A DNA stretch of 64,000 nt, from positions 27,094,001 to 27,158,000 of the forward strand of contig NC_043015.1 in the NCBI RefSeq assembly GCF_006345805.1. Direction: 5' to 3'. The DNA comes from Octopus sinensis. Taxonomy: Eukaryota. The notes below the pieces were generated by a model, which had not been told where the DNA came from, did not search any database, and saw only the letters and a list, made by a program, of their open reading frames with translations. A program made the translations under genes and the position numbers. Below are positions 43,707 through 63,008 of the stretch, one piece after another; the first letter of the stretch is position 1; every line of letters begins with the position of its first letter.

Positions 43707-43739
43707 TGTGTGCGTGTTTTTGTATGTTTATATATATAT

Positions 43740-45597
43740 GGTGCACTGTAGGATAGGGCCACTCCTGGAAAACGATGGCACACTCACAGGAAATCCAATG
43801 AGGGTAAGTGAAATACTAAATGAGCAATTCAAGAATATTTTCACTCCACCCCTAGGGCATTTTCAAGTCAGCAATCCAACTGACTTCTTTGCCACTTCAG
43901 ATATAAAATCAGAGGCAGCGATGATTGATTACATCAATATAAAGGAAGACGATGTAATAAAGGCTATTGATGAAATGAAAACAAACTCAGCTACTGGCCC
44001 CGATGGATTCCCAGCAATCCTTCTAAAAGTATGTAAGAGAGTCCTAGCAAGACCACTGCAGTTCCTCTTTCAGAGCTTCCTTGCAACTGGCAAACTTCCA
44101 AGAAAACTGAAGGAAGGTAAAATATGCCCTATTCATAAAGGAGGTAGCAGAGCGGAGGCCAAGAACTACAGACCTATCTCTCTGACCTAACACATCAGCA
44201 AGTTCATGGAACGAATAGTCAGAAGGAAATTAATCACCTTCCTTGAAGAAAATGACTTGCTGCCTGACACCCAACATGGTTTCCGACCAGGAAGACACTG
44301 CTTAACTCAGCTCCTACAGCACTATGACTGGGTGCTGAAACGACTGCTCAACCACTCAAATGTGGAAGTGATATATCTCGACTTTGCAAAGGCCTTTGAT
44401 AAAGTCGATCATAGAAATGATATGTCACAAACTGTGTGATCTTGGCATAGTTGGAAAATTGGGAGAATGGCTTCATGACTTTCTGAAGAATAGAAGTCAG
44501 GTGGTAGTAGCCAATGGGGCCACTTCCATTAACACGCAAATAGTGAGCGGTGTCCCGCAAGGCACTGTTCTGGGACCACTACTGTTCATAATGGCCCTCT
44601 CAGACATGCCCTCAGCCACGTACAGAGCCACGATCACAAGTTATGCAGATGATACAAAAGTTTCACAGGCAATACAGAACTCTGAAGACACTAAGCACCT
44701 GCAATGTGAGCTGGACAAAATATACGAGTGGGCTGAAAAGAATAGCATGCAGTTCAATGCTGAAAAGTTTCAAGCTTTATACTATCAGCATGCAAAACTA
44801 AATGCAATACACAATAAATACACTGGACCTGAAAGAATTGCAATCCCAGAGGCACAATCAATGCGAGACCTGGGTATTTACATGAGTGATGATGCAACCT
44901 TTCATGTGCATGTTGCTAAATTGGCAATGAAATGTAGGCGGCTGACCGGATGGATTCTTAGAACCTTTAGAACAAGAGACCAGGAAACCATGATGGTCCT
45001 CTGGAGGACACTTGTCCTAAGCCACTTTGACTATTGCTCTCAGCTATGGTCACCATCCAGTGTCAAGTTAATCACAGAACTTGAGGCGATCCAACGAAGC
45101 TACACGAAGAAGATAGCCTCTGTGCAGCATATAATCTATTGGGAAAGACTCAAGAGATTGAGACTCTATTCCTTAGAGCGTAGGCGAGAAAGATATGCCA
45201 TAATATACATCTGGAAGATCCTCGAAGGACTTGTTCCAAACTTTGTCATCGAGAGTTACACAAATGCCAGAACTGGGCGCCACTGCATAGTGCCAAGGAC
45301 TCCAAATTTGCCATCAAGATGTAGGACAAGATACTGTGATAGCCTGGGCTTCCGAGGCTCACAGCTCTTCAATATCCTCCCGAAGAACCTAAGAGACCTG
45401 CACGGGGTGGATGCAGATGTCTTTAAAATGAAACTGGATCTCTTCTTATCAGGTGCCCCAGATGAACCGACGGCAGGGGGTGCAGATGAGGGCAGCTGCA
45501 TCGAACTCTCTCATGCACCAAATGGCATTTGCTAAAAAGCATTCCTGCAGTAAAATCATGTAGCGACACCAAATGGCCACAGCTTGTGAGCTGAAAC
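43740..45597 (+). mobile_element. CR1-group LINE, 5'-truncated copy (RT + 3'UTR)
   Basis: GPDGFP, YRPISLT*, QHGFRPG, YLDFAKAFDKVDH, SGVPQGTVLGPLLF and YADDTK. It aligns with 49217-51085 (4 differences in a 60-nt sample). Stop at 44188-90 and a frameshift near 44411. Confidence 0.95.
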
Positions 45598-46200
45598 AAA
45601 ATATAAAATTTTTTTTAAAATGTATGTATACGTATTTCCGGTTCCGGCAGGGAAAGTCGTGTATCGCCTTTGCTCTGTTTAAAAAAGGCAGAAAGTGTGC
45701 ATAAATCGGTGAAATAATCTACTGAAAGTCACAAATTCAACTCATAAAGTCCACTACAACACTTCGGTTACAAATATATTAATCAAAAACGTAATATATT
45801 TTGCCTGAAGCCAAATACAGTAATAATTTTTCTTTTCGCCGAAAACGCACATGGTGGAAAAATTCACTGAAGTAACTTATCTCCTAGAAGAAGGAAAAAG
45901 AAACATCTCCTGGAAAATAATCCCGTAAACCACAAAAAATCCAGACCACATCGTTGGATTAAGTATCACTTTCATCTTCTATTTCAGATTATGTTTATTA
46001 TCCTATTTTATCCCCCTTAACTTAAGCCCACATCTCTGTTAAAGTTACGATCGCCATTTTTGTTTTGTTTACATATATATCTGTTCTCGAAGGCAGAAAT
46101 TGGCTTCAGAATTAAATAACCCTTTCTTCACACTTTAATATATATATTTTAATATATTTTCACTCATTTTTTTTTTTTTCACCTTCCTTCTCTCCCCGTC

Positions 46201-46370: not shown

Positions 46371-47118
46371 TACTCTATCTTCTAATTAGCCTTAAGATTA
46401 AATAACGTTTAATATTGTTTAATATTGTTTAACATTGTTAATAATTTTTCAGATACTCTATCTTCTAATTAGCCTTAAGAATAAACAACGTTTTTACCCA
46501 CACTTTAACATCTTCTAATTTTTTACCCACACTTTAATATCTTCTAATTAGCCTTTTACCCACATTCTAATATTTGTTAATATATTTTCAGATACTCTAT
46601 CCTCTAATTAGCCTTAAGATTAAATAACGTTCTTATCCACACTTTAACATTTTTACCCACACTTTAATATATTTTTGAATACTCTATCTTCTAATTAGCC
46701 TTAAGATTAAATAACGTTTTTACCCACACTTTAATATAATATTAATATTGTTAACATATTTTCAGACACTCTATCTCTTAATTAGCCTTAAGATTAAATA
46801 ACGTTTTACCCACAAACTTTAATATTGCTAATATACTAATACTCTATCCTCTAATTAGCCTTAAGATTAAATAACGTTTTTATCCACACTTTAACATTTT
46901 TACCCACACTTTAATATATTTTTGAATACTCTATCTTCTAATTAGCCTTAAGATTAAATAACGTTTTTATCCACACTCTAATATAATATTAATATTGCTA
47001 ATATATTTTCAGATACTCTATCTCCTAATTAGCCTTAAGATTAAATAACGTTTTTACCCACAAACTTTAATATTGTTAATATTTTTTTCAAATACTCTAT
47101 CTTCTAATTAGCCTTAAT
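46371..47118 (+). repeat. AT-rich minisatellite (about 73-87-bp monomers) directly upstream of LINE ORF1
   Basis: The core (T/C)ACTCTATC(T/C)TCTAATTAGCCTTAA starts at 46371, 46454, 46593, 46680, 46767, 46840, 46927, 47014 and 47093. Confidence 0.9.
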
Positions 47119-47178
47119 ATCTTCTTGTCTTCTCTCGAACATAGTTAGATAGATAAACAAATAGACAGATTATCCAGC

Positions 47179-48085
47179 ATGTCCAGAGCCTGGAGACCTG
47201 ACGAACTAGATTTATTTGTACGAGCCTGGGAGTGCGCCGACGGAGATAGCCCTAGCGAGGTGATTGCGGCTGCGCTGAAGAACAACGGCTACAAGAGGAC
47301 AGCGGCTCAGATGGAGTGAAAGAGACGGGAATTCGTGCGCTCATATGCGCTTGTACGGTCGCATATTGGCGCACTTGATGCCATCTTTGAGAACGAGCGG
47401 GGCAAAGATGGCAAGAATGGAGACGATGAAAGAAGTCACCCCCAACTGGTGGACGCCCGGGAGGAGGTTTTGAATGAGAAACCTGCCCGGGAAGTGAACC
47501 CAGGTGCAAGTTCTCCAACCGGCAGCAAGGGCCATGGAGACGGAGAACGCGGTGAAGAGGTAGAGGGAGGAGGAAGAACTAAAAGAAGGACTGGAAGAGC
47601 TAAAGGAAAAGCTCAAGCAGGACCAAAGGGTAGAAAAACCAGGAATAGAAGTGGAACCGCAAAAGATGGAAACAAACAGCGCACACGGGTGTGTAGGTTC
47701 TACCTGAGAGGTTCCTGCTGGCATGGAAAGGAAGGTGCAGGCTGCCGCTTTGCACATCGGGGACCCTGCCACAGAGACACGAGGCAGATGGACAAACCAT
47801 CAACACAAGGAAAAGGGATGGACCACATACCACTTGCCCCAAAGCGGAGGTACGCAGATGTTGTGCGTGCCACAAACCGCCAGCATGATGTTGTCGAAAG
47901 GGCAGCTGCTGAGCAAGAATCTTTTTTTGTGCATGGCACAAAAGATTGTACAGCAGCTGACCTGGCTTCATCAAACCCAAGCCCGCAGGTGGGACTACCC
48001 ACTATATACCAGACCACCACAGCAAACAGACCCAGGATGGACACCGCCGGCAACAACGTACACCTCACCTCGATGCTCCTACTGA
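47179..48085 (+). pseudogene. LINE ORF1 (Myb/SANT-like N-terminus, CCCH zinc finger), disrupted
   Basis: ATG at 47179 gives MSRAWRPDELDLFVRAWE..VIAAALKNNGYKRTAAQME*KRREF (TGA at 47317-19). CRFYLRGSCWHGKEGAGCRFAH follows. The probable native C-terminus is in the +1 frame, ending at 48085. Confidence 0.7.
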
Positions 48086-51020
48086 ACATCAGAGGACTGC
48101 AAACACTCAGTAACAGGACAAAGATCCCGTTCCTGAGAGACTTTGTTGCATGCAATCAAGCCTTATGCATAGCACTTACGGAAACGCACCTGAAACCGGA
48201 CATAGCAGATGCGGAGTTACACATACCACAGTATGCTGTACTACGGACCGACAGGAAAGAAAGGAGTCATGGAGGTGTTGCTATGTACATCCGTGAGGAC
48301 CTCACACCCCAGGTCCTCTTGTCATACTCAAACTCGGTGTGTGACACACTAATTGTACATATTAGGCAACTTGATGTAGTTGTGTGTGCTACATATCGCC
48401 CTCCAGATGCCCCAAGCCATGTGGGCAAGTTTGAAGACTGCCTTATAAAAATAGAAGTTCTAACCACATTAGAACAACACATAAGTGTACTTCTTGTGGG
48501 AGACTTCAATCTGCCCAATGTCAGATGGCCCGAGGGCCTTTCTCTCCCAGGAATGACAAGATGTGAACGAGGACAGGCGAGGTCCCTTCTGAACCTCATC
48601 AACACCCTGTACATGGAGCAGGTAATACTCCAACCAACCAGGGCAGGTAACACACTGGATCTCTGCTTCACAAATGACATGGATCTCATCCATAATGTGA
48701 AAGTGACACCGACATTACTCTCGGATCACAACATGATAGAGCTGACCATGTACGGGCCAAAAGAGAGCACGGACATGCAGCCTACAAGAAACCCTCAGAA
48801 TCTTTCCAGCTTGAACTACCATAAGGCAAACTGGAAACAAATTGAGAAAGAGATCCTCAAACAAAACTGGCCTAAATGTCTCTCCTCGCCAGACATTGAC
48901 GTGAAACTTCAACAATTCATGTCTGTAATGCAAGCCATATGCTACAAATGTGTCCCAGAGAGAAAGGCCACTGTACACAAGAACAAAATCCCCAGAGAGA
49001 GGAAAATTTTAATGAGACGGCGTACAAAATTTTCAAATCGCCTAAACAAACAGATTGAAAGCAGTGAAAAGTCCCGCCTAAAAATAAAACTGTTGGAAAT
49101 CGAAAAATGTCTGCAACTCTCCCATGAAAAAGAAAAAGCAGACAAAGAAGCCTGGGCTATAGACAACATAAAATCTAACCCCAGAGCTTTCTACAGGTAT
49201 GCCAAAGAAACAGCTACGGTGCACTGTAGAATAGGGCCACTCCTCGAAAAGGATGGCACACTTACAGGAAAACCAATGAGGGTAAGTGAAATACTGAATG
49301 AGCAATTCAAGAGTGTTTTCACTCCACCCCTTGGGCATCTCCAAATAACCAATCCAACTGACTTTTTTACCACTGCAGATATAAAATCAGAGGCGGCGAC
49401 GATAGATTACATCGATATAAAGGAAGACGATGTAATCAAGGCTATAGATGAAATGAAAACAGACTCAGCTACTGGCCCCGATGGATTCCCGGCAATCCTC
49501 CTAAAAGCATGTAAGAGAGTCCTAGCAAGACCACTGCAGTTCCTCTTTCAGAGCTTCCTTGCAGCTGGCAAACTTCCAAGAAACCTGAAGGAAGGTAAAA
49601 TATGCCCTATTCATAAAGGAGGTAGCAGAGCGGAAGCCAAGAACTATAGACCTATCTCTCTGACCTCACACATCAGCAAGGACATGGAACGAATAGTCAG
49701 AAGGAAGCTGGTCACCTTCCTTGAAGAGAATGACTTGCTGCCTGACACCCAACATGGTTTCCGACCAGGGCGAAGCTGTTTAACTCAGCTCCTACAACAC
49801 TATGACTGGGTGCTGAAACGGCTGCTCAACCACTCAAATGTGGAAGTGATATATCTCGACTTTGCAAAGGCCTTTGATAAAGTCGATCATGGAATGATAT
49901 GTCACAAACTGCGTGATCTCAACATAGTTGGAAAACTGGGAGAATGGCTTCATGACTTTCTGAAAGATAGAAGTCAGGTGGTAGTGGCCACTTCCATTAA
50001 CACGCAAATAGTGAGCGGTGTTCCGCAGGGCACTGTTCTGGGACCACTACTGTTCATAATGGCCCTCTCAGACATGCCCTCAGCCACGCAGAGAGCCAGG
50101 ATCACAAGTTATGCAGATGATACAAAAGTTTCACAGGCAATACAGAACCCTGAGGACACCAAACACCTGCAATGTGAGCTAGACAAAATATACAAGTGGG
50201 CCGAAAAGAATAGCATGCAGTTCAATGCTGAAAAGTTTCAAGCTCTATACTATCAGCATGCAAAACTAAATGCAATACCCAATGAATACACTGGACCCGG
50301 AGGAATAGCAATCCCAGAGGCACAATCAGAGCGTGACCTAGGTATTTACATGAGTGATGACGCGACCTTTCGTGTACATGTTGCTAAATTGGCAATGAAA
50401 TGTAGACGACTGGCCGGATGGATCCTCAGAACCTTTAGAACAAGAGAACAAGAAACCATGATGGTCCTCTGGAGACACTTGTCCTAAGCCACTTTGACTA
50501 CTGCTCTCAGTTATGGTCACCATCCAGTGTCAAGTTAATCACAGAGCTCGAGGCGATCCAACGTAGCTACACGAAGAAGATAGCCTCTATGCAGAATGTA
50601 AGCTACTGGGAAAGACTCAAGAGATTAAAAATATATTCCCTGGAGCGTAGGCGGGAAAGATATGCCATAATATACATCTGGAAGATCCTGGAGGGACGTG
50701 TCCTGAACTTTGGCATCGAGAGTTACGCAAATGCCAGAACTGGGCGCCACTGCGTGGTGCCTAGGACTCCAAACTTGCCATCAAGATGTAGGACAGGATT
50801 CTGTGATAGCCTGGGCTTCCGAGGCTCACAGCTCTTCAATATCCTCCCGAAGAACCTGAGAGACCTGCATGGGGTGGATGCAGATGTCTTTAAAATGAAG
50901 CTGGATCTCTTCCTGTCAGGTGTCCCAGATGAACCAACTTCACGGCAGGAGGGGCAGATGAGGGCAGCTGCATCGAACTCTCTCATGCACCAAATGGCAG
51001 TTTCTGGAAAGCTTTCGTGA
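48037..51020 (+). pseudogene. LINE ORF2: APE endonuclease + reverse transcriptase, one 1-bp frameshift near 50474
   Basis: APE motifs LLLNIRGL, LTETHL, GGVAMYI, GDFNLP, LDLCF and SDHN. RT motifs as in the sister copy. CTGGAGACAC here versus CTGGAGGACAC in the sister copy shifts the tail into frame 50589-51020. Confidence 0.92.
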
Positions 51021-51602
51021 AGTGAAACCAAGTAGCAACACCAAATGGCGGTGCCCCAGCATGGCCACAGCTCATAAGCTGAAACTAGAATCAATCAATC
51101 AATCAATCAATCAATCATACACACATGTGAGTGTATCGAGAGAGAAAGAGAAGAAAGGAGATATATATGTGTGTGTGTGTTTATGTATGTTTATATATAT
51201 ATATAATCACAGAGAACAAGTAAAGCGTATGGGTTGAAGGAAAGCGCAAACATTAATGCAAGTCTCCCTTCGTTAACTGTTGTTTGAATGAGATTAATGA
51301 TTCGGAACACTTATCAGCAACATCGCTCGCATCTTTGTGTCAGGAGATTAATAACAAATGATTTTGGGAAATACGATGGAAAAAACTGGAGAATAGAAAG
51401 GAATTGGGAGGAGATACCGACACATTTTGTTTATAGTATCACGTGAGTGAACGAAAATATACAAACATATACAGAAAAGTACAATAATTTTAGTTACGAC
51501 AAGTAACTGGAGGTCTTTCAGCAGAAGTAAGCAGTATTATTCAAACGACGCTAAAAAGAAAAACAGTTAAAGATGTAATTGTTCGGAGTTGGGTCACTGA
51601 AC

Positions 51603-51639
<37 letters not shown>

Positions 51640-51647
<8 letters not shown>

Positions 51648-51830
51648 CCGTTCTGTCTGTCTGTATGTCTTCTAAGATCTCGGGCATCCTCCATCCGATT
51701 GCTCTCAAATTTGATATGTAGATACTGACGGTACCAGGGCGTGTATAAGTCTTGAAAAATTACAAAAATCGATTCCAGGTGAGAATGCGATCGATAAATC
51801 CCTGGGAACATGCATTTGTGCGCGCAAGTA
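51640..51830 (+). mobile_element. Possible Helitron-type non-autonomous element 5' fragment
   Basis: (TA)n followed by CTGTCTGTCTGTATGTC..CCGATTGCTCTCAAATTT, a layout similar to the 5' part of 40005-40387. No 3' CTAG hairpin was found. Confidence 0.3.
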
Positions 51831-52144
51831 CATAGTTCCCTAGGTTGTTGCTTTTCATCAAAAATCGCCTCAAGTTGATTTCCTACATGTTTTTTCGGAT
51901 AAACTTATTATTCTCCCAGGTATGTTCTCATAAATTCATCATGCTTTTCCATCTAGATTTACCTCAAGCTATCCCATTTGCATGCATCGTTTTTCTCCTG
52001 CTTTTCTTCCGTCGACCTGTACATAACTGCACCTTTGTTGTTTTTGTACTGCTTAAAGGCACGTTTCTTTCCTTTCAAGCTTACTGTTTAAACCATGTTT
52101 GTGTTCTCCCAATCGACAGCCTTATTATTACTGGTACTTTAAAC

Positions 52145-52245
52145 TCTTTTACTGATGAAGTGTGACCTATGGTAGACTAGCTTAATTTAATTTAATTAAG
52201 CTGGTCTATCATTAAAGACACTGAAACGATGCATCGTATAAAAGA
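52145..52245 (+). ncRNA. Type I hammerhead ribozyme (475-nt family, copy A)
   Basis: Helix I TCTTTTA/TAAAAGA, core CTGATGA (52152-58), helix II AGTGT/ACACT plus a 19-bp apical stem, GAAA (52223-26), helix III palindrome ACGATGCATCGT, GUA cleavage after 52238. Confidence 0.92.
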
Positions 52246-52619
52246 TGAATTAGGGTAAACGTTTTTAAATTTTCACCTTATTTCCGAATTGCACTACTTG
52301 GCGGTTGGAGTTCTGGCTGCTCTTTCTGGTGGACGAATGGCCTGTTTAAGCCATTCCTAAATTGTTATATTTATATATATTTAGTCTTTGACTATTTTCT
52401 CTTTTCCACTAGGCCGCTGGTAGCGATAAATTTTTACTGAATTTTTTGCTACCCTAAATTGATTAATTGATAATTTTCTGACTAATTCTGAGATTGAATC
52501 GGCAGTTTATATTTGCTGCCGATAAGTTTGGCGCGAATGCGTTGGTCTTGAAAATTTTAAGACAGATATTCCCGAGGCATTGATACAGTCGCCTCGTGTA
52601 TATCCGTCTCTCCCAGGTT

Positions 52620-52720
52620 TCTTTTACTGATGAAGTGTGACCTATGGTAGACTAGCTTAATTTAATTTAATTAAGCTGGTCTATCATTAAAGACACTGAA
52701 ACGATGCATCGTATAAAAGA
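52620..52720 (+). ncRNA. Type I hammerhead ribozyme (475-nt family, copy B)
   Basis: Identical motif at +475. Predicted cleavage after 52713. Confidence 0.92.
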
Positions 52721-52994
52721 TGAATTAGGGTAAACGTTTTTAAATTTTCACCTTATTCCGAATTGCACTACTTGGCGGTTGTTGGAGTTCTGGCTGCTCT
52801 TTCTGGTGGACGAATGGCCTGTTTAAGCCATTCCTAAATTGTTATTTTATATATATTAGTCTTTGACTATTTTTCTTTTCCACTAGGCCGCTGGTAGCGA
52901 TAAATTTTTACTGAATTTTTTGCTACCCTAAATTGATTAATATATATATATATATAATATATATATATATGTATGTGTGTGTGTGTGTTTGTAT

Positions 52995-53220
52995 GTCTGT
53001 GTTTGTCCCCCTAGCATTGCTTGACAACCGATGCTGGTGTGTTTACGTCCCCGTCACTTAGCGGTTCGGCAAGAGAGACCTATAGAATAAGTACTGGGCT
53101 TACAAAGAATAAGTCCCGGGGTCGATTTGCTCGACTAAAGGCGGTGCTCCAGCATGGCCGCAGTCAATTGACTGAAACAAGTAAAAAGAGTAAAAAGAGT
53201 AAAAAGAGTAAAAAGGAGTA
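52995..53220 (+). mobile_element. SINE 3' half with (GTAAAAAGA)n tail
   Basis: Matches 57610-57820. It ends GGCGGTGCTCCAGCATGGCCGCAGTCAATTGACTGAAAC followed by about four 9-mer repeats. Confidence 0.9.
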
Positions 53221-53260
<40 letters not shown>

Positions 53261-53464
53261 TAGAAAAAAACCACTATTATGTAATTCAAACAATGATAGA
53301 CATAAACCAAATCATAAAAATTTTTTTTTTAAACATATAACTAGATCGCAAAACTATACTTTTTGTGATCTAGTTATATGTTTTAAAAAAATATTTTTTA
53401 TTTCTAATTATGAATTGGTTTATGTCTATCATTGTTTCAATTGCATAATAGTGGTTTTTATCTA
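53261..53464. repeat. Long near-perfect inverted repeat (foldback/MITE-like), arms of about 90 bp with an 8-nt loop
   Basis: AAAACCACTATTATG..CATATAACTAGATCGCAAA and TTTGTGATCTAGTTATATG..CATAATAGTGGTTTT are reverse complements. Confidence 0.85.
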
Positions 53465-53550
53465 ATTTATATATTATATATTCATATTGAGAAATCTGAT
53501 TTAATACTAAATTGAATTTGTCCCTGTAAGTTTGGAGTTATACTGTCTAA

Positions 53551-53581
<31 letters not shown>

Positions 53582-53583
<2 letters not shown>

Positions 53584-54652
53584 TTTTTTTTTCTTCTTTC
53601 AAATTTGCTTCCATTTCTTGCCGAGTGTCTTCCCGACTCCTAGGGCAAAGAAACTCATAGTATACATTGGTAGGCCATTAAACCAAACTCAGTAGTTCGT
53701 TCATTTTAAAATACATGAGCAGCAACAGTTCTCACATCGACAATGCTCTTCTCAATACGTGTGATGTACCAGTTAAGACAATCTTTTGCACTTCTTGCAG
53801 GGATGGTAAGCCAGGGATCATTCTCATATAATTTTCGGTTCCCTTCTTAATCATTCCTAGTGCTCCTACGATCACTGGTATTGTAACCGCCTTGAGATGC
53901 CACATTTTCTCAATTTCAATGAGTAGGTCTTTATATTTTCTGAGCTTGTCAAACTCTTTCGCTGAGATATTATGATCACAGGGGATGCTCATGTCGATCA
54001 ATAAGCAAACTTTATTGTTTTGGTCTTTCACAACAATATCTGGTTTATCGGCCTTGATGGTTCGGTCTGTATGTACTGGAAAGTCCCACAGAATGGTTAC
54101 ATTTTCTCCTTCAGTTACAGCCTCAGGGTGGTGATTATACAACTTGTCGGCAGTTTTGATATTGTAATGCCGACTTATTAGCCAGTGTAGATATTGGCCA
54201 ACTCTGTCATGTCTTAATTTATACTCCACTGGTGCTAAGACTTTACATCCAGAGATTAGGTGGTCCACTGTTTCAATTATGTCGTTGCAGAATCGGCATT
54301 TTGGGTCTGCTCCATTTTTCATCACATTGGCCTGGTAGTTCCGGGTTAATAGGCTTTGATCTTGAGCAGCCAGGATGAAACCTTCGCTCTCTGCTTTTAG
54401 CCCTGAGCTCCGTAGCCACTGATGGGTTTGCTTCTGGTCAACATCAGCTTGTTTGCTGCGGGTCACATATTTGCCGTGCAGAGGTTTCTCCTCCCACCTA
54501 TCAGCCAATTGCTCGTGCGCTTTCTTCATTGCCATCATTTTCACCTTCTTTGCAACAATAGTTGCCGTACTTCCCTCGGGTTGTTCAGTTTGGGTATCCT
54601 GCACGAGATCAATAGCAAATTTTTTGCTTTCCTTTATGATAGAATTATTATC
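53582..54652 (-). mobile_element. R4/Dong-like RLE retrotransposon, young 5'-truncated copy with uninterrupted C-terminal ORF
   Basis: ORF 53732-54650 contains CRFCNDIIETVDHLISGC (CCHC) and ILWDF..KPDIVVKD..LLIDMSIP (RLE). The 3'UTR abuts (TAA)n at 53551-53581. Confidence 0.92.
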
Positions 54653-54752
<100 letters not shown>

Positions 54753-55170
54753 TATATACAGGGACACTCACACACACGCACACACAAAGTGACAGACTTA
54801 CAGGCAGACAGAGACATGGAGATAAATAATGGAAAATGCAGTGAATGACATTTCTTATTTCAAATCACTACAATTGTTTGCACACATCGGCACACCCGTA
54901 TTACTTTGATGAGACGATAAACTTAATATATTGCATAAGACTCGTGAGCCATCAAAGGTGTATAATGTGTTTCTTCAGGTGAGTGTTTTGAATAAGTTCT
55001 TCGTTAGATTCTATTGCCGTTTCACTCTTTCAAAGAATGAATAATCAAAGCAGTGTGCTATTTTTAGCAACTTACAAACAAAACTAAACCCTCAAATATA
55101 AGTGACAGACACAAGTATAACCCAAATATAAAATATATACATACATATATGTATAAATACATACATATAT

Positions 55171-55743
55171 ATTTATTTGTGAATTAAGGCTACCATTGGT
55201 TTCATGTTAAGGAGAGTGGGAAAATATCCAAGTATCTTAACAATTTTCAAGCCGATGACATGGAGAAAGGTGTTCGACTCCATTTTGGAAAACAATCTCG
55301 TTTCGTTCACGAGATTTCTTGTAAATTCTCGAGAATGAAACAATGAATCAAGGGACACAACTCTGATAGACTTTTTTTATTGTTTGTCTCCCTTGGAATT
55401 TCTTTTCAGTAAATTTCTCAATGTTTATGATCTTTTTCTGGGCATTATGTTTTATACTTGTATGCTGGCGCTTATTTCTTCTTTGTGTGGAGCTTGTGAC
55501 ATTTCTTCTTTCTTGTATGCAGTTTGTGTGCCATGTGCCTTCTAGAGTAGCATCCCTTGATTCATTTTTCATTGTTTCATTCTCGCGAATTTACGAGAAA
55601 TCCTCTGAATAAAACGAGATTGTTTTCCTGAATAGAGGCGAACACTTTTCTCCTTGTGATCGGCTTCAAAATTGTTAAGATACTTGGATATTCTCCCATT
55701 CTTCTTAGCATGAAACCAATGGTAGCCTTAAACCATAAATAAA
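55171..55743. mobile_element. MITE/foldback element with imperfect terminal inverted repeats of about 190 bp
   Basis: TTAAGGCTACCATTGGTTTCATG..ATCCAAGTATCTTAACAATTTT (55185-55250) is mirrored at 55665-55730. Flanks are TA-rich. Confidence 0.8.
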
Positions 55744-55832
55744 GAATATATTTATATAGCAATGCGGTGCTGAGCACTCATTCCAACGTTTTACATTTAC
55801 ACGCGCACGCACACACACACACACACCACACA

Positions 55833-55872
<40 letters not shown>

Positions 55873-55880
55873 ACATATAT

Positions 55881-55939
<59 letters not shown>

Positions 55940-55956
55940 AATATATATATATATAT

Positions 55957-56003
<47 letters not shown>

Positions 56004-56744
56004 ATGTATATATCTGTACGTATATACATATCTACCTATGTATACACGTATGTGCGCGTGTGTGTACATCCATTCATTCATTCATACATACATACCTACA
56101 TACATACATACATACATGCATACATACATACATGCATACATACATACATACATACATTTCCGTGAAAACATTTTTTTGATATTGAGAACACGTCAGTCTT
56201 TTTGCTTTGTCTTTTTTTACTCTTTTTTTTATATTTGATCGAGTATGTTTCTGGAACATTTTTTTAAAACTATTTTTGTCCTATTTTCCCTGCGTATTCT
56301 TGCCTCAACACAGGACAACGCTGCTCCCAACAAAACTCTGAATGACTCGGGAGAATATCTGAAGAGAGAAATAAAACTAAATAAATAAGAAAGATAAGAC
56401 GCTTGGCATATTTGCAGTGATATATACAGGAAGAGAGACAGAAAGACAGACAGACAGACAGACAGAGGGAGAGAGTGTGTGTGGGTAATCGTTATCATCG
56501 ATTAGTCTAGTCTATTGATTGTTATTGATTTTATCGATCTAGAAAAGATGAATGAAAGTAAACATCAGGAAAATAATACAAGCGGGAATTTTAGCGATTT
56601 CAGCGATTTTCTCGTCTATTTTCGCCGCGGGATGGCATATATACTTACATACACGCATCCGCGTACGCGCACGCACATACTCACATACACATACATACGT
56701 GTATGTATTTATGTGCACACACACATTCATATATATTCACATAC

Positions 56745-56775
<31 letters not shown>

Positions 56776-57404
56776 TGTATGTATGTAGTATGTATGTATG
56801 TCGGTGGTTTAGCAGAAGAAAGAGGAGACATGCGCAGACGGGCAGCTCTTGGTCTTCTGCAGCAATATATTGCACAATCTGCATCTTTTATGGAACTTTC
56901 CAGACATGGATCTATTGGACCCAGATATGAAGTGTTGTTTTTATTATTCTGTCCCAGGATTGTGTTGCTACTTCATTCTGTTGCACTGATGGGGTAGCGG
57001 GGGAGAGACAGCTGTATTCTTTACCGTGAATAGATGATGTCAGCTCCTTCCTTGGAAAGTTATAAAAGCTGAATGAGCTAATGGCTTGTAGTGCTTCTGG
57101 ATGGCAACTAAGAGTCGTTAGAATAACTTAATCCAGTGATCTGTTCAGCTCACAGCTTGGTCATGGGCCTGCAGTTTGGCAGAATCATTTTGGCAGTAAT
57201 TCGATATTCCTTTCTATCGTTTAACGATGGGTGGGGTGTCCCATGGCAAAACACTGAGAAACCAGTATTGCAAAGTTATCTAACTGTAGTTTTTACTCCG
57301 AATGACTCAGAGTTTTGCCCTTCCAGAAAAGGAGAGGTCTTGATATATCAAAATAGAAAGGACACAGGCGCATATAAAAATAAAAATCTACGCACACAAA
57401 CATA

Positions 57405-57820
57405 GGCGCAGGAGTGGCTGTGTGGTAAGTAGCTTGCTAACCAGCCACATGGTTCCGGGTTCAGTCCCACTGCGTGGCATCTTGGGCAAGTGTCTTCTGC
57501 TATAGCCCCGGGCCGACCAATGCCTTGTGAGTGGATTTGGTAGACGGAAACTGAAAGAAGCCTGTCGTATATATGTATATATATATATATATAAATGTGT
57601 GTGTGTGTGTGTTTGTCCCCCTAGCATTGCTTGACAACCGATGCTGGTGTGTTTATGTCCCCGTTACTTGGCGGTTCGGCGAAGGAGACCGATAGAATAA
57701 GTACTGGGTTAACAAAAGAATAAGTCCCGGGGTCGAGTTGCTCGATTAAAGGCGGTGCTCCAGCATGGCCGCAGTCAAATGACTGAAACAAGTAAAAGAG
57801 AAAAGAGAGTAAAAAGAGTA
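57405..57820 (+). mobile_element. Full-length tRNA-derived SINE with internal (TA)n(TG)n and LINE-like 3' tail
   Basis: A-box-like TGGCTGTGTGG, B-box-like GGTTCAGTCCC, central TTGGGCAAG domain, and a 3' block shared with the CR1 LINE. Confidence 0.92.
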
Positions 57821-57854
57821 TTCATTCAGGCATAAAAAGATAGACAGACACACA

Positions 57855-57932
<78 letters not shown>

Positions 57933-59941
57933 TACATTGGAGCATTCCAACATGTGGACCTACACACACAACTGTTTAAACAAATACACAAAGGAATGTT
58001 AAGTACACACCTACACACAGAGACAAACACATGAACAAAATGAAGTACAGTAAAGATATTCGCTAGACAAATACAGAAATATAGTATGGCGTAAGTTACT
58101 GTTTGAAAGTATCTCATGAGACACAAGCGAAGATATCGACCTATGTAATGAAAGACTAAACATAGTCAATAACATTGTGCTCCAGTTATTGCTTCGCTCT
58201 CCAGAACGCGCAAGATAAAACAGAGATATGGAAAGTAAACTCTTCTAATGATATTTAACTATTAAATAAATTTGAATAAATAAAGGGGTAAAAATTGGTG
58301 AAGGGAGAGGAGAGAAGGCAAGTGAGAAAGTAAATGTATACTAGTAAAGTGTCTAGTGAGAGTCGTGAGGAAAAGGAGAGCAGAGACGATGAGAGGGAGC
58401 ATTCAAACGGTAGAAAAGATGAAGAAGAGAAGATGTCAGAAATAATAAAAATCTAATATTCATAAAAGTCTGAAGAAGAATTTGCTTCGACAGATATTTT
58501 GTTTTCAAAGTATTTTCCTAGAAGTCCCAACCTCCGCAGAAGTTTTCCTTAGAGAATTTTTCAGTGGATTTTCGAGGACCCCTTTATAAATAAAAGACAC
58601 AAAAAAACTGAAAGAACAACATCGGTAATGTGTTTGAATAAGATAAATCGTGGTCTCTTCTGGGACGTCTTTGATCTCAGACCTTCTCGATCAGTTTTGA
58701 GTTGGGGATAAACCACATCAAGATAGAATTTAAAGGGTACCCATTGAAAATAGTTTTCACCAGCACATTAACTCATCCCGTCAATGACAACAATAGAGAT
58801 ACCACAGAACTTTATGGATATATTTGGAGATTAAGGTATCAAAAGGAGGTCACATTTAGTATATGGACAATACTGAAGCCTGATCAAGAAATGAATCAAA
58901 ACAGTGTCACCTCCGCCTTACAGAGAAACTTCATATCGTTTGCTACACTACTCATGTCCTAAACACGTCGGCATGAGAGTGCAAACTAGAAATAGAATTT
59001 TAAGGTGGACACTACACATGTTACAAATAGCAGCCATGGCCTTCTAAAATCACAACTAATTTGTTGAAAATCTGAAAGAACGCCTTAGATAAAGAGTTCT
59101 GGATAGAGAAACATTCCTGACATCATCGGTTCACTCGGAGGTAAAATGAAGCGAAACAACAATAAAAACATCAAATAAGAAGTAGCGAACCTCCCTCGTC
59201 TGGCCTACACTACATCTCACGAACTTTAAGACAAACAATCCCGAGGCAAGGTGAATGACGCTTGATATCAGGTTGCAGTTTAAATTTTCAGAATTGACTG
59301 CAACATTTATTACGAGAAACATTTAAGTGTGGAATCGTAATCCTTTTTATTCGATATAAAGTTACATTTTGCACATTTCGAAATTGAAGAATGTTAAACT
59401 ATTTTGCTTTCATACCTGAGGTGAAGGAAAACTCTGTGCGTGAGTGCACGCGCGCATGTGTTTGTGTGTGTGTGTGTTAATCCGATGTATTTGTTAAACG
59501 TAATTTTAATATATTCTTCTGAACCTTCCAACCAAAAGCTCTTTTTTGGAGCCAATTAGTAGAAGATAATCACAGGAAGTAGACGAGTTTGCTACTGATG
59601 GATATTTCGACCCTGCAATTCGATATACTCCCTGTTCCAGTCACCTTTGAAACAATTTTATGTTAGTGTAATGGGAACGGTTGAAGCAAACCGAAAACTG
59701 CCAATCAGACAGTGAAAAGTTTAACAATAACTTCTGGTGTCACAGTGATGAACGAATTCGGTTTGAAGAGAAAAAAAACCCACAATTACGTCAATCACCT
59801 GACTGCACAGGGTGTAGAGGGATGGGGGAGAGGGGGTCGTCTGTGTATTTGTGTGCGAGATTTTATATGTGTATGTGCATTTATATTTATGTCTATGCAA
59901 GTTTATACATATATGTGTGTGTGTATGTATGAATGTATGTA

Positions 59942-59985
<44 letters not shown>

Positions 59986-60264
59986 TATAAATGACATTTA
60001 TACAGCTTTAGTAAAACATTGACTCAACTCTAACTTACGAAAAGATTCGTAGGCGTAAAACACGTCCGCGTCATGAGATGTTCAAAGCCATAGTCGGCAG
60101 GTCTAATTATGGACAAGTAGTCTACAGCAACCAAACTATAACTAAGGTTGAAGTGACTCAAACTGTTTCTGAATTCGTATAACCTCAACCAAATGTATTG
60201 AATATTACTTTCGTTCGTTGATTCACGTACACAGACATTATTTATATATATATGCCACGATATA

Positions 60265-60440
60265 TCACTGGCCACTAAACCTTTTCTATTTTCTCTCCCT
60301 GTTTATTTCTGTGTTTCATTCTGTCGAAGAGCGTAGGCTCGAGACGTAAAAGACTGTCTCACTTCCCGAGCGTTAAACTAATACATGTTTGTTGTTTACA
60401 CACCCGTCTTCGTCTTTTGTTTTTTTTTGTAAGTCTTCAC
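60265..60440 (+). mobile_element. Short (TA)n-flanked repeat with a degenerate minimal hammerhead (family of 28426-28600)
   Basis: CTGTCGAA-GAGC GTAG GCTC-GAGA-CGTA-AAAGA at 60321-60353. The A14>G change is likely inactivating. Confidence 0.65.
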
Positions 60441-60465
60441 TATATAATATATATATATATATTTG

Positions 60466-60520
<55 letters not shown>

Positions 60521-60924
60521 CCGTATTTGCTTTGCAAGATTCCTGATATGAAATCGTGTTTTGAAACAGATATTGTTATATTTGGGGATGGTCATTTTTT
60601 TTGCTACATAAACACACGCACTATATTCGTTCTTCACTCATTTATTACTGTTCTTATTTCATGTCCATTGTCTGGATATCTTTCATCACACACCTGTGGC
60701 CTCTTCGCCGACTCTCCATCCCGTGTGTCTCCTGTTCCGTTTAGTCCATTCTATCTTTCTATGGTGTAATAAACAAATGGTGGTGGTGATAATGTTGTTG
60801 TTGCAGTTGTATCTGGCTTAACCCTAAAGCGAACTCTAATGATTGATCGACAGAGTTGGTGTCACACCTCATCAAACACTCCATTTGTGGCCTTCTCAAC
60901 TTTCTTCTGTACTATATATCCTTT

Positions 60925-61090
60925 ATATTTTACTTGCTTTAATCATAGGTTTGTGGTCATGCTGCAGCACTGCCTTGAATGGATTTAGTCAAACAGATCC
61001 ACCCTAGCGCTTGTGATTTTGCAGGTCTTTGAAGGCTAGTACTTATTCTGTTGGCCTCTTTTGTCGAACCGCTAATTTACGAGGATGTTA
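60925..61090 (-). mobile_element. Degenerate SINE 3' fragment
   Basis: GGTCATGCTGCAGCACTGCCTT and TAGTACTTATTCTGTTGGCCTCTTTTGTCGAACCGCTAA match the reverse complement of the SINE tail. Confidence 0.6.
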
Positions 61091-61232
61091 ACTGGTAGAG
61101 TATATATGTATGTTTTCATGAATGTATGTACGTATATGTGTACGCATGTATGCATGCATGTGTGTATGTATATATGCTTATGTGTATTTATTTATATATA
61201 TGTGTGTCGATGTATGTATGTATGTCTATGTA

Positions 61233-61264
<32 letters not shown>

Positions 61265-61299
61265 ATCCATATATATATGTATACATATATATATATGTA

Positions 61300-61334
<35 letters not shown>

Positions 61335-61348
61335 ATATATATATATAT

Positions 61349-61398
<50 letters not shown>

Positions 61399-61564
61399 AC
61401 GTAAAGTGTACTAGCCATCTGAATGTGGCTAGCCACTGGGGGTGGGTGTTACTGACGCTTTTAGCCCCAGGAGATCGACGTCTCCAGCTGGCCTTAGACA
61501 CAATTTCAGTGCCCTTGTGTTATTTGCAAAGGGAGGTCATCCTCCCTCGAAAACCTAAGCGATA

Positions 61565-61609
61565 CATACGGACTATAGTTTCAAGGTTTTTGCCTCTCGT
61601 CAACGTATG
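61565..61609 (-). ncRNA. Type I hammerhead ribozyme, C3U variant, inverted-arm copy
   Basis: Exact reverse complement of 61892-61936. Confidence 0.75.
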
Positions 61610-61891
61610 GTAAACACCGGTTTTCGATTAAGGAGACCTTTGTAAATAATATTTAACGTTTTTCCCAGCAACCACAGTCACTGATTTAGAAGCGTCAGTA
61701 ACACCCACCCCCAGTGGCTAGCCACATTCAGATGGCTAGTACTCTTTACGTTGTCGAGCGGTTACTGTTTATATCTCGTTCGGAGATTTATTAATGTTTT
61801 CAGACAGTTTTTCTAAATCAGTGACTGTGGTTGCTGGAAAAACGTTAAATATTATTTGTAAAGGTCTCCTTCATCGAAAACCGGTGTTTAC

Positions 61892-61936
61892 CATACGTTG
61901 ACGAGAGGCAAAAACCTTGAAACTATAGTCCGTATG
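61892..61936 (+). ncRNA. Type I hammerhead ribozyme, C3U variant (351-nt family)
   Basis: Helix I CATACG/CGTATG, core TTGACGA, helix II GAGG-CAAAAA-CCTT, GAAA, helix III AC-TATA-GT, GUC cleavage after 61930. Confidence 0.75.
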
Positions 61937-62175
61937 TATCACTTAGGTTTTCGAGGGAGGATGACCTCCCTTTGCAAATAACACAAGGGCACTGAAATTG
62001 TGCCTAAGGCCAGCTGGAGACGTCGATCTCCTGGGGCTAAAAGCGTCAGTAACACCCACCCCCAGTGGCTAGCCACATTCAGATGGCTAGTACACTTTAC
62101 GTTGTCGAGCGGTTACTGTTTATATCTCGTTCGGAGATTTATTAATACTTATATATAATATATTATATATATATA

Positions 62176-62235
<60 letters not shown>

Positions 62236-62245
62236 CATATATGTT

Positions 62246-62279
<34 letters not shown>

Positions 62280-62287
62280 TGTATGTA

Positions 62288-62426
62288 TTTCTTTTCTTTT
62301 TTTCTTTTACTGGTTTCAGTCATTTGACTGCGGCCATGCTGGAGCACCGCCTTTAGTCGAGCAAATCGACCCTGGGACTTATTCTTTGTAAGCCCAGTAT
62401 TTATTCTATCGGTCTCTTTTGCCGAA
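62288..62426 (-). mobile_element. SINE 3' fragment
   Basis: GTTTCAGTCATTTGACTGCGGCCATGCTGGAGCACCGCC is the reverse complement of the SINE tail. Confidence 0.9.
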
Positions 62427-62469
62427 TGTATGTATGTATGTATGTATGTATGTATATTTGTATGTATCG

Positions 62470-62683
62470 TATTTCAACATCTGGCAAGGTACTTGGGGGA
62501 ACCGTTGTAATGATCCAGCCTGCATCAGGAAACCCTTCTGTCCTAGTTGGAGGAACACTACAGAAAATGGTAGACAAATTTGTTGACCTGGACAACACAC
62601 TCAGTTGTTATTGTCCCTTGGATGACGAAATAGCTTTAAGGCTTCAGAAGGCAACTGATTACTTCAGGGACTTTGTCACCTAA
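62470..62683 (+). mobile_element. RTE-clade LINE RT-tail fragment
   Basis: VMIQPASG..VLVGGTLQKMVDKFVDLDNTLS..LDDEIALRLQKA, like RTE V..F.YLGS.LS..ID.EI..RI.KA. Confidence 0.6.
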
Positions 62684-62952
62684 CACACGGTATTGCAAGG
62701 CAAACAAAAGTAGCTGTGTACTATGTGTGTTGTGCTAACGTCTCTCCTTTACTCATGTAACACATGGACCCTTTACGTCTGACATACATTTTCATGTTGG
62801 CAGGGGGATAACATTTTGAGCATCGAAGTGATGGGGGTATTTGCATAAATATTACTTGGATAAACTCGGGTATTAAAAAAATTTTAATCCAACTGTAATA
62901 TATAAATGTATCATACATACACACACATACGCATATGTGTGTGTGTGTGTGT

Positions 62953-63008
<56 letters not shown>

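What the first reader, a model, noticed from the sequence alone, without database searches (positions are those of the whole stretch)
51047..51085. LINE and SINE share a 3' tail with a compensatorily changed hairpin: candidate LINE-SINE partner pair
Seen: the LINE ends GGCGGTGCCCCAGCATGGCCA-CAGCT CATA AGCTG-AAAC. The SINEs end GGCGGTGCTCCAGCATGGCCG-CAGTC AAAT GACTG-AAAC (57751-57789; also 53140-53178 and 62314-62352 on minus). The sister LINE has CAGCT TGTG AGCTG. The 5-bp stem is kept through a double compensatory change (CT/AG to TC/GA) while the loop varies. Established: stringent LINEs recognise a 3' stem-loop, and partner SINEs borrow that tail. Inference: this CR1-group LINE family (or a close relative) mobilises this abundant SINE. 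The tail repeats differ (AATC versus GTAAAAAGA), which points to a sibling subfamily as the direct driver.
Basis: partly seen in the sequence, partly recalled or inferred. Interest (0 to 1): 0.75.

Follow-up and report, generated by a model that had tools for sequence, protein, structure and literature searches.

The report
Octopus LINE and SINE share tail
In this octopus-type genome a short parasitic repeat (SINE) carries the same roughly 40-base, two-hairpin 3' end as a family of autonomous LINE retrotransposons, the standard sign that the LINE family copies the SINE; this is a new example of a well-known mechanism, not a new mechanism.

Summary
LINE_A ends at 51047-51085 with a block that recurs at the 3' end of three SINE copies (30/39 identical; none expected by chance). 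Corrections: the 53140 copy is on the + strand with loop AATT, the minus copy is 62351-62313, and the sister LINE lacks 16 nt of the block.

The shared tail is two adjacent hairpins, not one. HP1 is the near-invariant "box" GGCGGUGC-NCCA-GCAUGGCC, with a G.G mismatch. AAAC and short tandem repeats follow.

Seven related LINE tails from other octopod material, including Argonauta hians, carry the same module just after the ORF2 stop. The block is therefore ancestral to the LINE clade, not a captured SINE piece.

Three base pairs covary without breaking. The ancestral HP2 stem is CAGCC/GGCUG; the window LINE changed pair 5 and the SINE changed pair 4, independently.

LINE_A is among the poorest matches to the SINE: 29/35 non-loop positions and (AATC)n repeats. 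Siblings L124, L125 and L001 match better (31-32/35) and carry the SINE's TAAAAGA repeats.

Verdict: a credible stringent-type LINE-SINE partnership at clade level, with a sibling subfamily as the likely driver. It is a new member of a known kind. Mobilisation and CR1 membership are untested.

The parts
47150..51117 (+). LINE_A, a near-full-length non-LTR retrotransposon (5' boundary approximate). Main ORF 47335-50487 (APE + RT), continued after a 1-nt deletion near 50474 by the C-terminal ORF 50589-51020.
   Evidence: Pfam RVT_1 1.3e-29, Exo_endo_phos_2 6.9e-11. Nearest solved structure is human L1 ORF2p, E 2e-21. Frameshift located by alignment to LINE_B. Extent from self-blast.
51021..51045 (+). 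Short 3' UTR spacer (25 nt) between the ORF2 stop (TGA 51018-51020) and hairpin 1.
   Evidence: Read directly.
51046..51067 (+). Hairpin 1 (HP1) of the LINE_A tail: UGGC.GGUG C[CCCA]GCAU.GCCA, i.e. 4 bp, a 1x1 G.G internal loop, 4 bp, and tetraloop NCCA.
   Evidence: MFE and centroid fold. Pair col7/22 covaries CG7/UA2/UG2; the other pairs are invariant.
51068..51081 (+).
   Evidence: Pairs 4 and 5 covary; 100% of cells paired in 11 sequences.
51082..51117 (+). Invariant AAAC (51082-51085), then TAG, then the terminal (AATC)7 repeat (51089-51117).
   Evidence: TRF.
43737..45598 (+). LINE_B, a 5'-truncated sister copy (91.5% identical to LINE_A). ORF 44384-45535. Tail remnant 45571-45597 has HP2 (45580-45593) and AAAC, but the 5' half of HP1 is deleted.
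   Evidence: CM score only 30.8 bits.
57405..57819 (+). Full-length SINE, in order:
- tRNA-like head with A-box-like TGGCTGTGTGG (57415-57425) and B-box-like GGTTCAGTCCC (57458-57468)
- conserved central domain (about 57471-57560)
- internal (TA)n(TG)n
- 3' body
- LINE-type tail: HP1 57751-57770, HP2 57772-57785, AAAC 57786-57789
- A-rich repeats to about 57819
   Evidence: CM 71.2 bits. The central domain is 84% identical to Argonauta elements.
52951..53221 (+). 5'-truncated SINE copy. Tail module 53140-53178 (HP2 loop AAUU), then (AGTAAAAAG)4.6 at 53180-53221.
62295..62426 (-). 5'-truncated SINE copy on the minus strand. Tail module 62351 down to 62313, then A-rich repeats.
60930..61085 (-). 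Decayed relative of the SINE. The HP1 box has 3 mismatches and HP2 no longer pairs.
   Evidence: CM 22.4 bits; fold z +0.6.

Best explanation
**What it is.** The 3' end of an octopod APE+RT LINE clade (CR1-like in layout) is a conserved RNA module. It has four parts:
- HP1: a near-invariant hairpin with a G.G internal loop and an NCCA tetraloop.
- HP2: directly abutting HP1, a 5-6 bp hairpin whose stem is kept by compensatory change and whose loop is free to vary.
- The invariant spacer AAAC.
- Short tandem repeats.

The tRNA-headed SINE acquired this roughly 40-nt module from a LINE of this clade.

**How it most likely works** (inferred by analogy with UnaL2/UnaSINE1 and ZfL2). ORF2 protein made from an active LINE binds the hairpin module of the Pol III SINE transcript in trans. 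It primes reverse transcription on the terminal repeats at a nicked target and inserts a copy, often 5'-truncated.

**Who drives it.** The direct driver is probably a sibling subfamily with (R)TAAAAGA(R) repeats, like L001, L124 and L125. It is probably not the window's LINE_A, whose HP2 stem and (AATC)n repeats have diverged.

**Shown versus inferred.** Shown: homology, position, structure, covariation and the LINE-to-SINE direction. Inferred: protein recognition, trans-mobilisation and the identity of the driver.
For: 1. **Shared tail beyond chance.** 0 expected matches versus 4-5 found; blastn E 1e-5 to LINE_A and 7e-9 to L124.
2. **Same position.** The module sits at the extreme 3' end in both elements, directly before the terminal repeats.
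3. **Clade-wide in LINEs.** L001, L002, L122, L123, L124, L125 and L129 (61-73% amino-acid identity, including Argonauta hians) all carry it just after the stop codon. The direction of transfer is therefore LINE to SINE.
4. **Structure.** All 10 full tails fold as the same two hairpins as their minimum-energy structure, z -2.2 to -4.4.
5. **Covariation.** 97% of cells are paired, against 19-46% when the partner columns are slid. Three pairs change on both sides and none of them breaks: HP1 col7/22 CG7/UA2/UG2; HP2 pair 4 CG8/UA3; HP2 pair 5 CG10/UA1.
6. **Terminal repeats.** TAAAAGA-type repeats are shared by the SINE and by L001, L124 and L125, but not by LINE_A.
7. **In-window exclusivity.** A covariance model of the tail finds no other element in the window with this tail. 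The other RT-bearing ORFs lack it.
8. **Precedent from the literature.**
   - A 3' stem-loop plus terminal repeats is the only cis requirement for UnaL2 and UnaSINE retrotransposition (PMC1636434).
   - In ZfL2, stems can be swapped if pairing is kept, whereas disrupted stems abolish retrotransposition (PMC4176376).
   - Bivalve SINE-LINE tail homologies are 35-61 bp at 72-95% identity (PMC11481361). The present 39-45 nt at 77-87% is in that range.
Against: - No sampled LINE has the SINE's exact HP2 stem (CAGUC/GACUG).
- The better-matching LINEs (L001, L124, L125) come from other samples of unknown species, so their presence in this genome is not shown.
- The covariation rests on about three independent events among 11 related sequences.
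- Only 3 SINE copies were available.
- No target-site duplications could be defined.
- Age overlap of LINE and SINE activity was not measured.
- No experiment was done.
Confidence: 0.7

Rival explanations
1. LINE_A's own subfamily (stem CAGCU/AGCUG, (AATC)n repeats) is the direct driver of the SINE.
For: It is the only LINE with this tail found in the same window as the SINEs. HP1 is 19/20 identical and AAAC is identical. Its ORF2 is broken by only one frameshift, so the subfamily was active fairly recently. Stem identity may not matter if pairing is kept (PMC4176376).
Against: Over the 35 non-loop positions it ties with the Argonauta copy L002 for the lowest score among all sampled LINE tails (29/35, against 30-32 for the others). 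The terminal repeats, the part used to prime reverse transcription in UnaL2 (PMC1636434), are unrelated: (AATC)n versus (GTAAAAGA)n.
Confidence: 0.12
2. The tail is a fossil. The SINE took its 3' end from this LINE clade long ago, but it is or was amplified by an unrelated LINE (for example RTE or L1-Tx1) that needs only the terminal repeats or A-rich end.
For: The held octopus literature reports very active RTE, Dong-R4 and L1-Tx1 elements and does not name a SINE partner (PMC13282606, PMC8967140, PMC9115989). The SINE ends are A-rich.
Against: HP1, the HP2 pairing and AAAC are perfectly kept in all three SINE copies, although the copies differ by 7-9% elsewhere. HP2 carries a compensated rather than a decayed stem. 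This argues for selection on the source SINE for the hairpin module.
Confidence: 0.12
3. The block in LINE_A is a captured SINE fragment, or a SINE inserted at the LINE's end (SINE-to-LINE direction).
For: The sister copy LINE_B lacks 16 nt of the block.
Against: Seven other LINE lineages, including two Argonauta copies, have the complete block at the same place after the stop codon. No SINE body sequence lies upstream of the block in any LINE. The LINE_B gap lies between ATGGC direct repeats, the signature of a small deletion.
Confidence: 0.03
4. Chance resemblance of two GC-rich hairpins.
For: Short sequences. The 20-mer alone occurs by chance in GC-rich bacterial metagenomes.
Against: 0 expected in this AT-rich window versus 4 exact matches. 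The position at the element ends is identical. The match extends through HP1, HP2, AAAC and, in sibling LINEs, the repeats.
Confidence: 0.01

Closest known systems
UnaL2 / UnaSINE1-2 of the eel and ZfL2-1/ZfL2-2 of zebrafish (L2 clade; stringent-type LINE-SINE partners; PMC1636434, PMC4176376)
   Same: A conserved 3' tail of about 40-60 nt is shared by LINE and SINE. It holds a stem-loop with an internal mismatch or hinge, followed by short terminal tandem repeats. The stem is maintained by pairing rather than by sequence. The SINE has a tRNA-type head.
   Different: Here there are two abutting hairpins, and the invariant one (HP1, loop NCCA) is not the one with the variable loop. The repeats are 8-9 nt and A-rich rather than UGUAA. 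The host is a cephalopod. There are no functional data. The LINE clade is not shown to be L2.
Amniote CR1 LINEs and their partner SINEs (3' UTR hairpin plus octamer microsatellite; PMC4316615)
   Same: APE+RT ORF2, a very short 3' UTR, a hairpin followed by a microsatellite of about 8 nt, and severe 5' truncation (LINE_B; Argonauta tail-only copies). That is a lead only.
   Different: The repeat unit and hairpin sequences are unrelated to ATTCTRTG. RT phylogeny was not done. There is an N-terminal CCCH-like zinc finger instead of a recognised CR1 ORF1 domain.
Bivalve HCD-SINEs with CR1, CR1-Zenon, L2 or Nimb tails (PMC11481361; PMC4824008)
   Same: Molluscan tRNA-derived SINEs with a conserved central domain and a LINE-derived tail of 35-61 bp at 72-95% identity. 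Modules are reshuffled in a mosaic fashion: Argonauta elements share the central domain but not the tail.
   Different: A different molluscan class. In the papers held here, the octopus SINEs are listed as tRNA-Deu, tRNA-Core or unclassified, with no LINE partner named.

Membership tests
Stringent-type LINE-SINE partner pair (shared 3' tail) | The SINE 3' end is homologous to the 3' end of a LINE's 3' UTR | tested here: met
   30/39 identical to LINE_A. blastn E 1e-5; E 7e-9 to sibling L124.
Stringent-type LINE-SINE partner pair (shared 3' tail) | The homology lies at the extreme 3' end of both elements, just upstream of the terminal repeats, and belongs to the LINE consensus | tested here: met
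   Present in 8 full LINE tails of the clade, 25-45 nt after the stop codon.
Stringent-type LINE-SINE partner pair (shared 3' tail) | Conserved stem-loop supported by compensatory change | tested here: met
   Two hairpins are the MFE in all tails. 97% of cells are paired, and 3 robust covarying pairs never break. Few independent events.
Stringent-type LINE-SINE partner pair (shared 3' tail) | LINE and SINE have the same terminal tandem repeat | tested here: not met
   Not met for LINE_A itself: (AATC)n versus (GTAAAAGA)n. Met for siblings L001, L124 and L125 from other samples.
Stringent-type LINE-SINE partner pair (shared 3' tail) | Partner LINE and SINE coexist in one genome with overlapping periods of activity | tested here: inconclusive
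   LINE_A/B and the SINE coexist in the window. Copy divergences are similar: about 8.5% between the LINEs and 7-9% between SINE copies. There is no genome-wide age profile, and the better-matching siblings are not shown to be in this genome.
Stringent-type LINE-SINE partner pair (shared 3' tail) | Trans-mobilisation of the SINE tail by the LINE's ORF2 protein | not testable with these tools
   Needs a retrotransposition assay.
CR1 clade of non-LTR retrotransposons | RT-domain phylogeny places the element inside CR1 | not tested
   No reference set of classified LINE RTs was available. The names of database hits are uninformative.
CR1 clade of non-LTR retrotransposons | N-terminal APE endonuclease + RT, with no RNase H or restriction-like endonuclease | tested here: met
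   Pfam finds only Exo_endo_phos(_2) and RVT_1, and nothing in the C-terminal 143 aa. This excludes the R2, R4/Dong and Hero types but not L2, Rex1, RTE or Jockey.
CR1 clade of non-LTR retrotransposons | 3' UTR hairpin followed by an octamer-type microsatellite | tested here: met
   Hairpins plus 8-9-nt repeats in most clade members: ATTAAAAC, RTAAAAGA, GTAAAAAGA. LINE_A has a 4-nt unit. L2-clade elements have a similar layout, so this feature is not exclusive.
CR1 clade of non-LTR retrotransposons | CR1-type C-terminal ORF2 domain | tested here: inconclusive
The reference is unverified.
tRNA-derived SINE | Internal Pol III A and B boxes in a tRNA-like head | tested here: inconclusive
   TGGCTGTGTGG at 57415-57425 and GGTTCAGTCCC at 57458-57468 are near-consensus and 43 nt apart. 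ARAGORN and Rfam call no tRNA.
tRNA-derived SINE | Short, non-coding, dispersed copies with 5' truncation and a common 3' end | tested here: met
   One full copy (about 415 bp) and two 5'-truncated copies, in both orientations, at 91-93% identity.

The most novel reading that the evidence does not exclude
HP1 (GGUGC-NCCA-GCAU with a G.G mismatch) is conserved from Octopus-type genomes to Argonauta.

One CR1-like LINE clade carrying this module would then be the engine behind the octopus-specific SINE expansion, for which the papers held here name no LINE partner. If so, that expansion, often linked to octopus genome rearrangement and neural transcriptomes, becomes experimentally tractable through a defined 40-nt RNA module.
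Probability: 0.35. Interest if true: 0.5.

Novelty: new member of a known kind. Interest (0 to 1): 0.35.

Why it matters
SINEs make up a large share of octopus genomes: 11.6% in O. vulgaris (PMC13282606) and about 40% of the TE content (PMC8967140). They have been invoked in genome rearrangement and brain transcript diversity. Yet the papers I could search classify them only by head and core, and name no driving LINE.

A defined shared tail would:
- assign the SINE to a LINE clade;
- predict which LINE subfamilies must have been active during SINE bursts;
- give a small RNA module (two hairpins + AAAC + repeats) on which recognition can be tested.

Mechanistically it adds nothing new to the established stringent LINE-SINE model. 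Repbase or Dfam curators may already have noted the relationship.

Tried and rejected
- **Metagenome scan for the 20-nt box**. It returned 119 loci, all GC-rich bacterial chance matches without a hairpin or AAAC.
- **Rfam, permissive thresholds, 50.9-63 kb**. Only microsatellite-driven miRNA false positives, far below gathering scores. No known RNA family for the tail and no tRNA call for the SINE head.
- **ARAGORN**. No tRNA.
- **Full-text searches.** Searches for the tail sequence and for a CR1 C-terminal peptide motif gave no papers. The SINEBase supplements are not held and the O. vulgaris repeat paper holds only one small supplementary file, which I did not open. Albertin 2015 and Ohshima 1996 are not held.
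- **Cluster names of homologues**. Uninformative for clade assignment.
- **Distant relatives L127/L128** (about 49% amino-acid identity, another assembly). An HP1-like box with a U.U mismatch, a different second palindrome, an A-rich spacer and (AAGGTAAC)n can be read by eye. Folding energies are no better than shuffles (z about 0) and the CM scores are weak. I do not count them as support.
- **Target-site duplications.** They could not be defined, because microsatellites flank every copy.
- **L126.** It holds the ORF fragment but no tail.
- **Argonauta SINE-like elements.** They share only the central domain, not the tail, so they give no extra SINE tails.

Full report
**1. Observation**

The quoted sequences are in the window.
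- LINE_A ends GGCGGTGCCCCAGCATGGCC-A-CAGCT-CATA-AGCTG-AAAC at 51047-51085, followed by TAG and (AATC)7.
- The SINE ends GGCGGTGCTCCAGCATGGCC-G-CAGTC-AAAT-GACTG-AAAC at 57751-57789.
- The 20-nt box occurs four times exactly in the window and once as a 3-mismatch relic, against none in 100 dinucleotide-preserving shuffles.
- CAGCTNNNNAGCTG occurs only at the two LINE ends.
- blastn of the SINE 3' half finds the LINE end at E 1e-5.

Four corrections are needed.
- The 53140-53178 copy is on the + strand and has loop AATT.
- The minus-strand copy is 62351-62313.
- The sister LINE lacks 16 nt of the block.
- The window holds only one full SINE (about 57405-57819), two 5'-truncated copies (52951-53221 on +, 62295-62426 on -) and one decayed relative (60930-61085 on -). 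Abundance therefore cannot be judged here.

**2. The elements**

LINE_A (about 47150-51117):
- One long ORF (47335-50487) with APE endonuclease and RT domains (Pfam).
- Its nearest solved relative is human L1 ORF2p, aligned from APE through RT.
- A single 1-nt deletion near 50474, seen relative to the sister copy, shifts the frame. The C-terminal domain continues in 50589-51020.
- Only 25 nt separate the stop codon from the shared block.

LINE_B (43737-45598) is a 5'-truncated copy, 91.5% identical to LINE_A.

Protein searches place the window in an octopod.
- The best hits are an ENA contig (73%) and Argonauta hians (61%).
- A second Argonauta copy is named after an Octopus LOC gene.

The SINE consists of:
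- a tRNA-like head with near-consensus A and B boxes (read; no tRNA was called by ARAGORN or Rfam);
- a central domain that is 84% identical to elements in Argonauta;
- an internal microsatellite;
- a 3' body with no LINE similarity;
- the tail.

**3. Is the block part of the LINE, or a captured SINE piece?**

I retrieved DNA around the closest ORF2 C-terminal homologues. Seven further LINE tails were recovered: L001, L002 and L129 (Argonauta), L122, L123, L124 and L125 (a second NCBI assembly). All of them carry GGYGGTGCNCCAGCATGRCC, one spacer base, a 5-6 bp hairpin, AAAC, and then tandem repeats. In each, the module starts within about 25-45 nt of the stop codon.

The block is therefore ancestral to the LINE clade, and the transfer went from LINE to SINE. 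LINE_B's missing 16 nt lies between two ATGGC repeats. It is a secondary deletion that removes half of a hairpin.

**4. Structure**

Folding shows that the 'block' is itself a hairpin (HP1).
- Its form is (U)GGC.GGUGC[NCCA]GCAU.GCC(A).
- It has a conserved 1x1 G.G internal loop.

All ten full tails give this two-hairpin structure as their minimum-energy fold, with z-scores from -2.2 to -4.4. LINE_B and the decayed SINE relic do not.

| Measure | Result |
|---|---|
| Cells paired (11 sequences) | 97% |
| Cells paired when partner columns are slid | 19-46% |
| HP1 pair col7/22 | C-G x7, U-A x2, U-G x2 |
| HP2 pair 4 | C-G x8, U-A x3 (the SINEs) |
| HP2 pair 5 | C-G x10, U-A x1 (LINE_A; also LINE_B) |

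No cell in these three pairs is unpaired. With Argonauta as outgroup, the ancestral HP2 stem is CAGCC/GGCUG.

- one on the LINE_A/B lineage (pair 5);
- one on the SINE lineage (pair 4).

The evidence is consistent but thin: about three events among related sequences. HP2 loops vary freely (3-10 nt), whereas the HP1 stem, its loop positions 2-4, the G.G mismatch and AAAC are invariant. This suggests, by inference only, that HP1 is the sequence-specific determinant and HP2 a structural one.

**5. Which LINE is the partner?**

The table counts identities to the SINE over the 35 non-loop positions.

| LINE tail | Identical positions (of 35) |
|---|---|
| LINE_A | 29 |
| L002 (Argonauta) | 29 |
| L122 | 30 |
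| L123 | 30 |
| L001 | 31 |
| L125 | 31 |
| L129 (Argonauta) | 31 |
| L124 | 32 |

- L124 also shares the SINE's UCCA loop in HP1, and gives the best blastn hit (86.7% over 45 nt, E 7e-9).
- L001, L124 and L125 end in (R)TAAAAGA(R) repeats like the SINE. LINE_A ends in (AATC)n.
- In UnaL2 the terminal repeat is where reverse transcription starts (PMC1636434), so a TAAAAGA-tailed sibling is the more likely driver.
- No sampled LINE has the SINE's CAGUC/GACUG stem.
- The better-matching siblings come from samples of unknown species.
- A covariance model of the tail finds no further tails in the window.
- The other RT-bearing ORFs in the window lack the tail.

**6. Mechanism**

By analogy with experimentally studied stringent LINEs, ORF2 protein recognises the hairpin module. 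In ZfL2 this is done through the linker between endonuclease and RT. There, stems can be exchanged if pairing is kept, while disrupted stems abolish activity (PMC4176376). Reverse transcription then starts on the terminal repeats (PMC1636434). A Pol III SINE transcript with the same module would be copied in trans. Nothing of this was tested here.

**7. Comparison and novelty**

The arrangement is the textbook LINE-SINE 'common tail'.
- The extent and identity of the homology (39-45 nt, 77-87%) fall within what is accepted as partnership evidence in bivalves (35-61 bp, 72-95%; PMC11481361).
- The hairpin-plus-octamer layout resembles CR1 (PMC4316615) and also L2. The clade was not resolved. 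A memory-typed avian CR1 C-terminus aligns at E 1e-6, which is a lead only.
- In the papers I could search, octopus SINEs are classed as tRNA-Deu, tRNA-Core or 'unclassified', and no LINE partner is named.
- Repbase and Dfam could not be consulted.

I rate it a new member of a known kind, of modest interest.

**8. Dead ends**

These are listed under Tried and rejected. The main one was the metagenome scan, which returned only bacterial chance matches.

Noticed in passing
window 45571-45598 versus 51043-51085: The sister LINE copy has lost 16 nt (ATGGCGGTGCCCCAGC) between two ATGGC direct repeats. This removes the 5' half of hairpin 1 and looks like a microhomology-mediated deletion.
   Followed up: yes
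window about 50474: LINE_A's ORF2 is interrupted by a single 1-nt deletion relative to LINE_B. Otherwise the reading frame is open from 47335 to 51020. LINE_B has its own break near 44412-44417.
   Followed up: partly
window 47635-47787 and 47180-47320: The N-terminal part of the LINE ORF has a CCCH-type zinc-finger-like stretch (weak Pfam Torus hit, below the cut-off). A short separate ORF lies just upstream. This may be a vestigial or fused ORF1.
   Followed up: no
window 46568-47117: A tandem satellite (periods 87, 160 and 247 bp; 78-93% matches) lies directly upstream of LINE_A's 5' end.
   Followed up: no
window 13837-15345 (-) and 53732-54817 (-): Other retroelement remnants are present. 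One is an RVT_1 ORF with a weak CCHC zinc-knuckle ORF upstream of it. The other is an ORF with a weak zf-RVT hit. Neither has the two-hairpin tail.
   Followed up: partly
window 60930-61085 (-): An older SINE-like relic. Its HP1 box has 3 mismatches, its HP2 no longer pairs, and its tail is A-rich. It is either a decayed copy or an older related family.
   Followed up: partly
protein P0125 (RefSeq WP_347046854.1, 'Escherichia coli'): A 94-aa 'E. coli hypothetical protein' on a 563-bp contig is 67% identical to the C-terminal domain of this octopod LINE. It is almost certainly eukaryotic contamination of a bacterial assembly.
   Followed up: no
L002 1533-1622 (+) and 16208-16297 (-) (Argonauta hians): Argonauta elements share the SINE's central domain (84% over 90 nt) but have a different body and no two-hairpin tail. 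This fits modular (mosaic) SINE evolution around a conserved core. From memory the core looks Deu-like; that was not tested.
   Followed up: partly
L002 19096-19134 (-); L129 12331-12376 (-) and 4138-4187 (-): Argonauta carries tail-only or heavily 5'-truncated copies of its LINE (about 40-50 nt). This shows extreme 5' truncation, as described for CR1-type elements.
   Followed up: no
L127 about 2160-2250; L128 about 1985-2075: LINE relatives at about 49% identity, from another genome assembly, show by eye an HP1-like box with a U.U mismatch in place of G.G, a different second palindrome, an A-rich spacer and (AAGGTAAC)n. Folding energy does not support the structure (z about 0).
   Followed up: partly
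window 50900-63000: All permissive Rfam hits (mir-297, mir-3149, mir-466 and others) sit on TA/TG/TACA microsatellites and fall far below the gathering scores. They are artefacts.
   Followed up: yes
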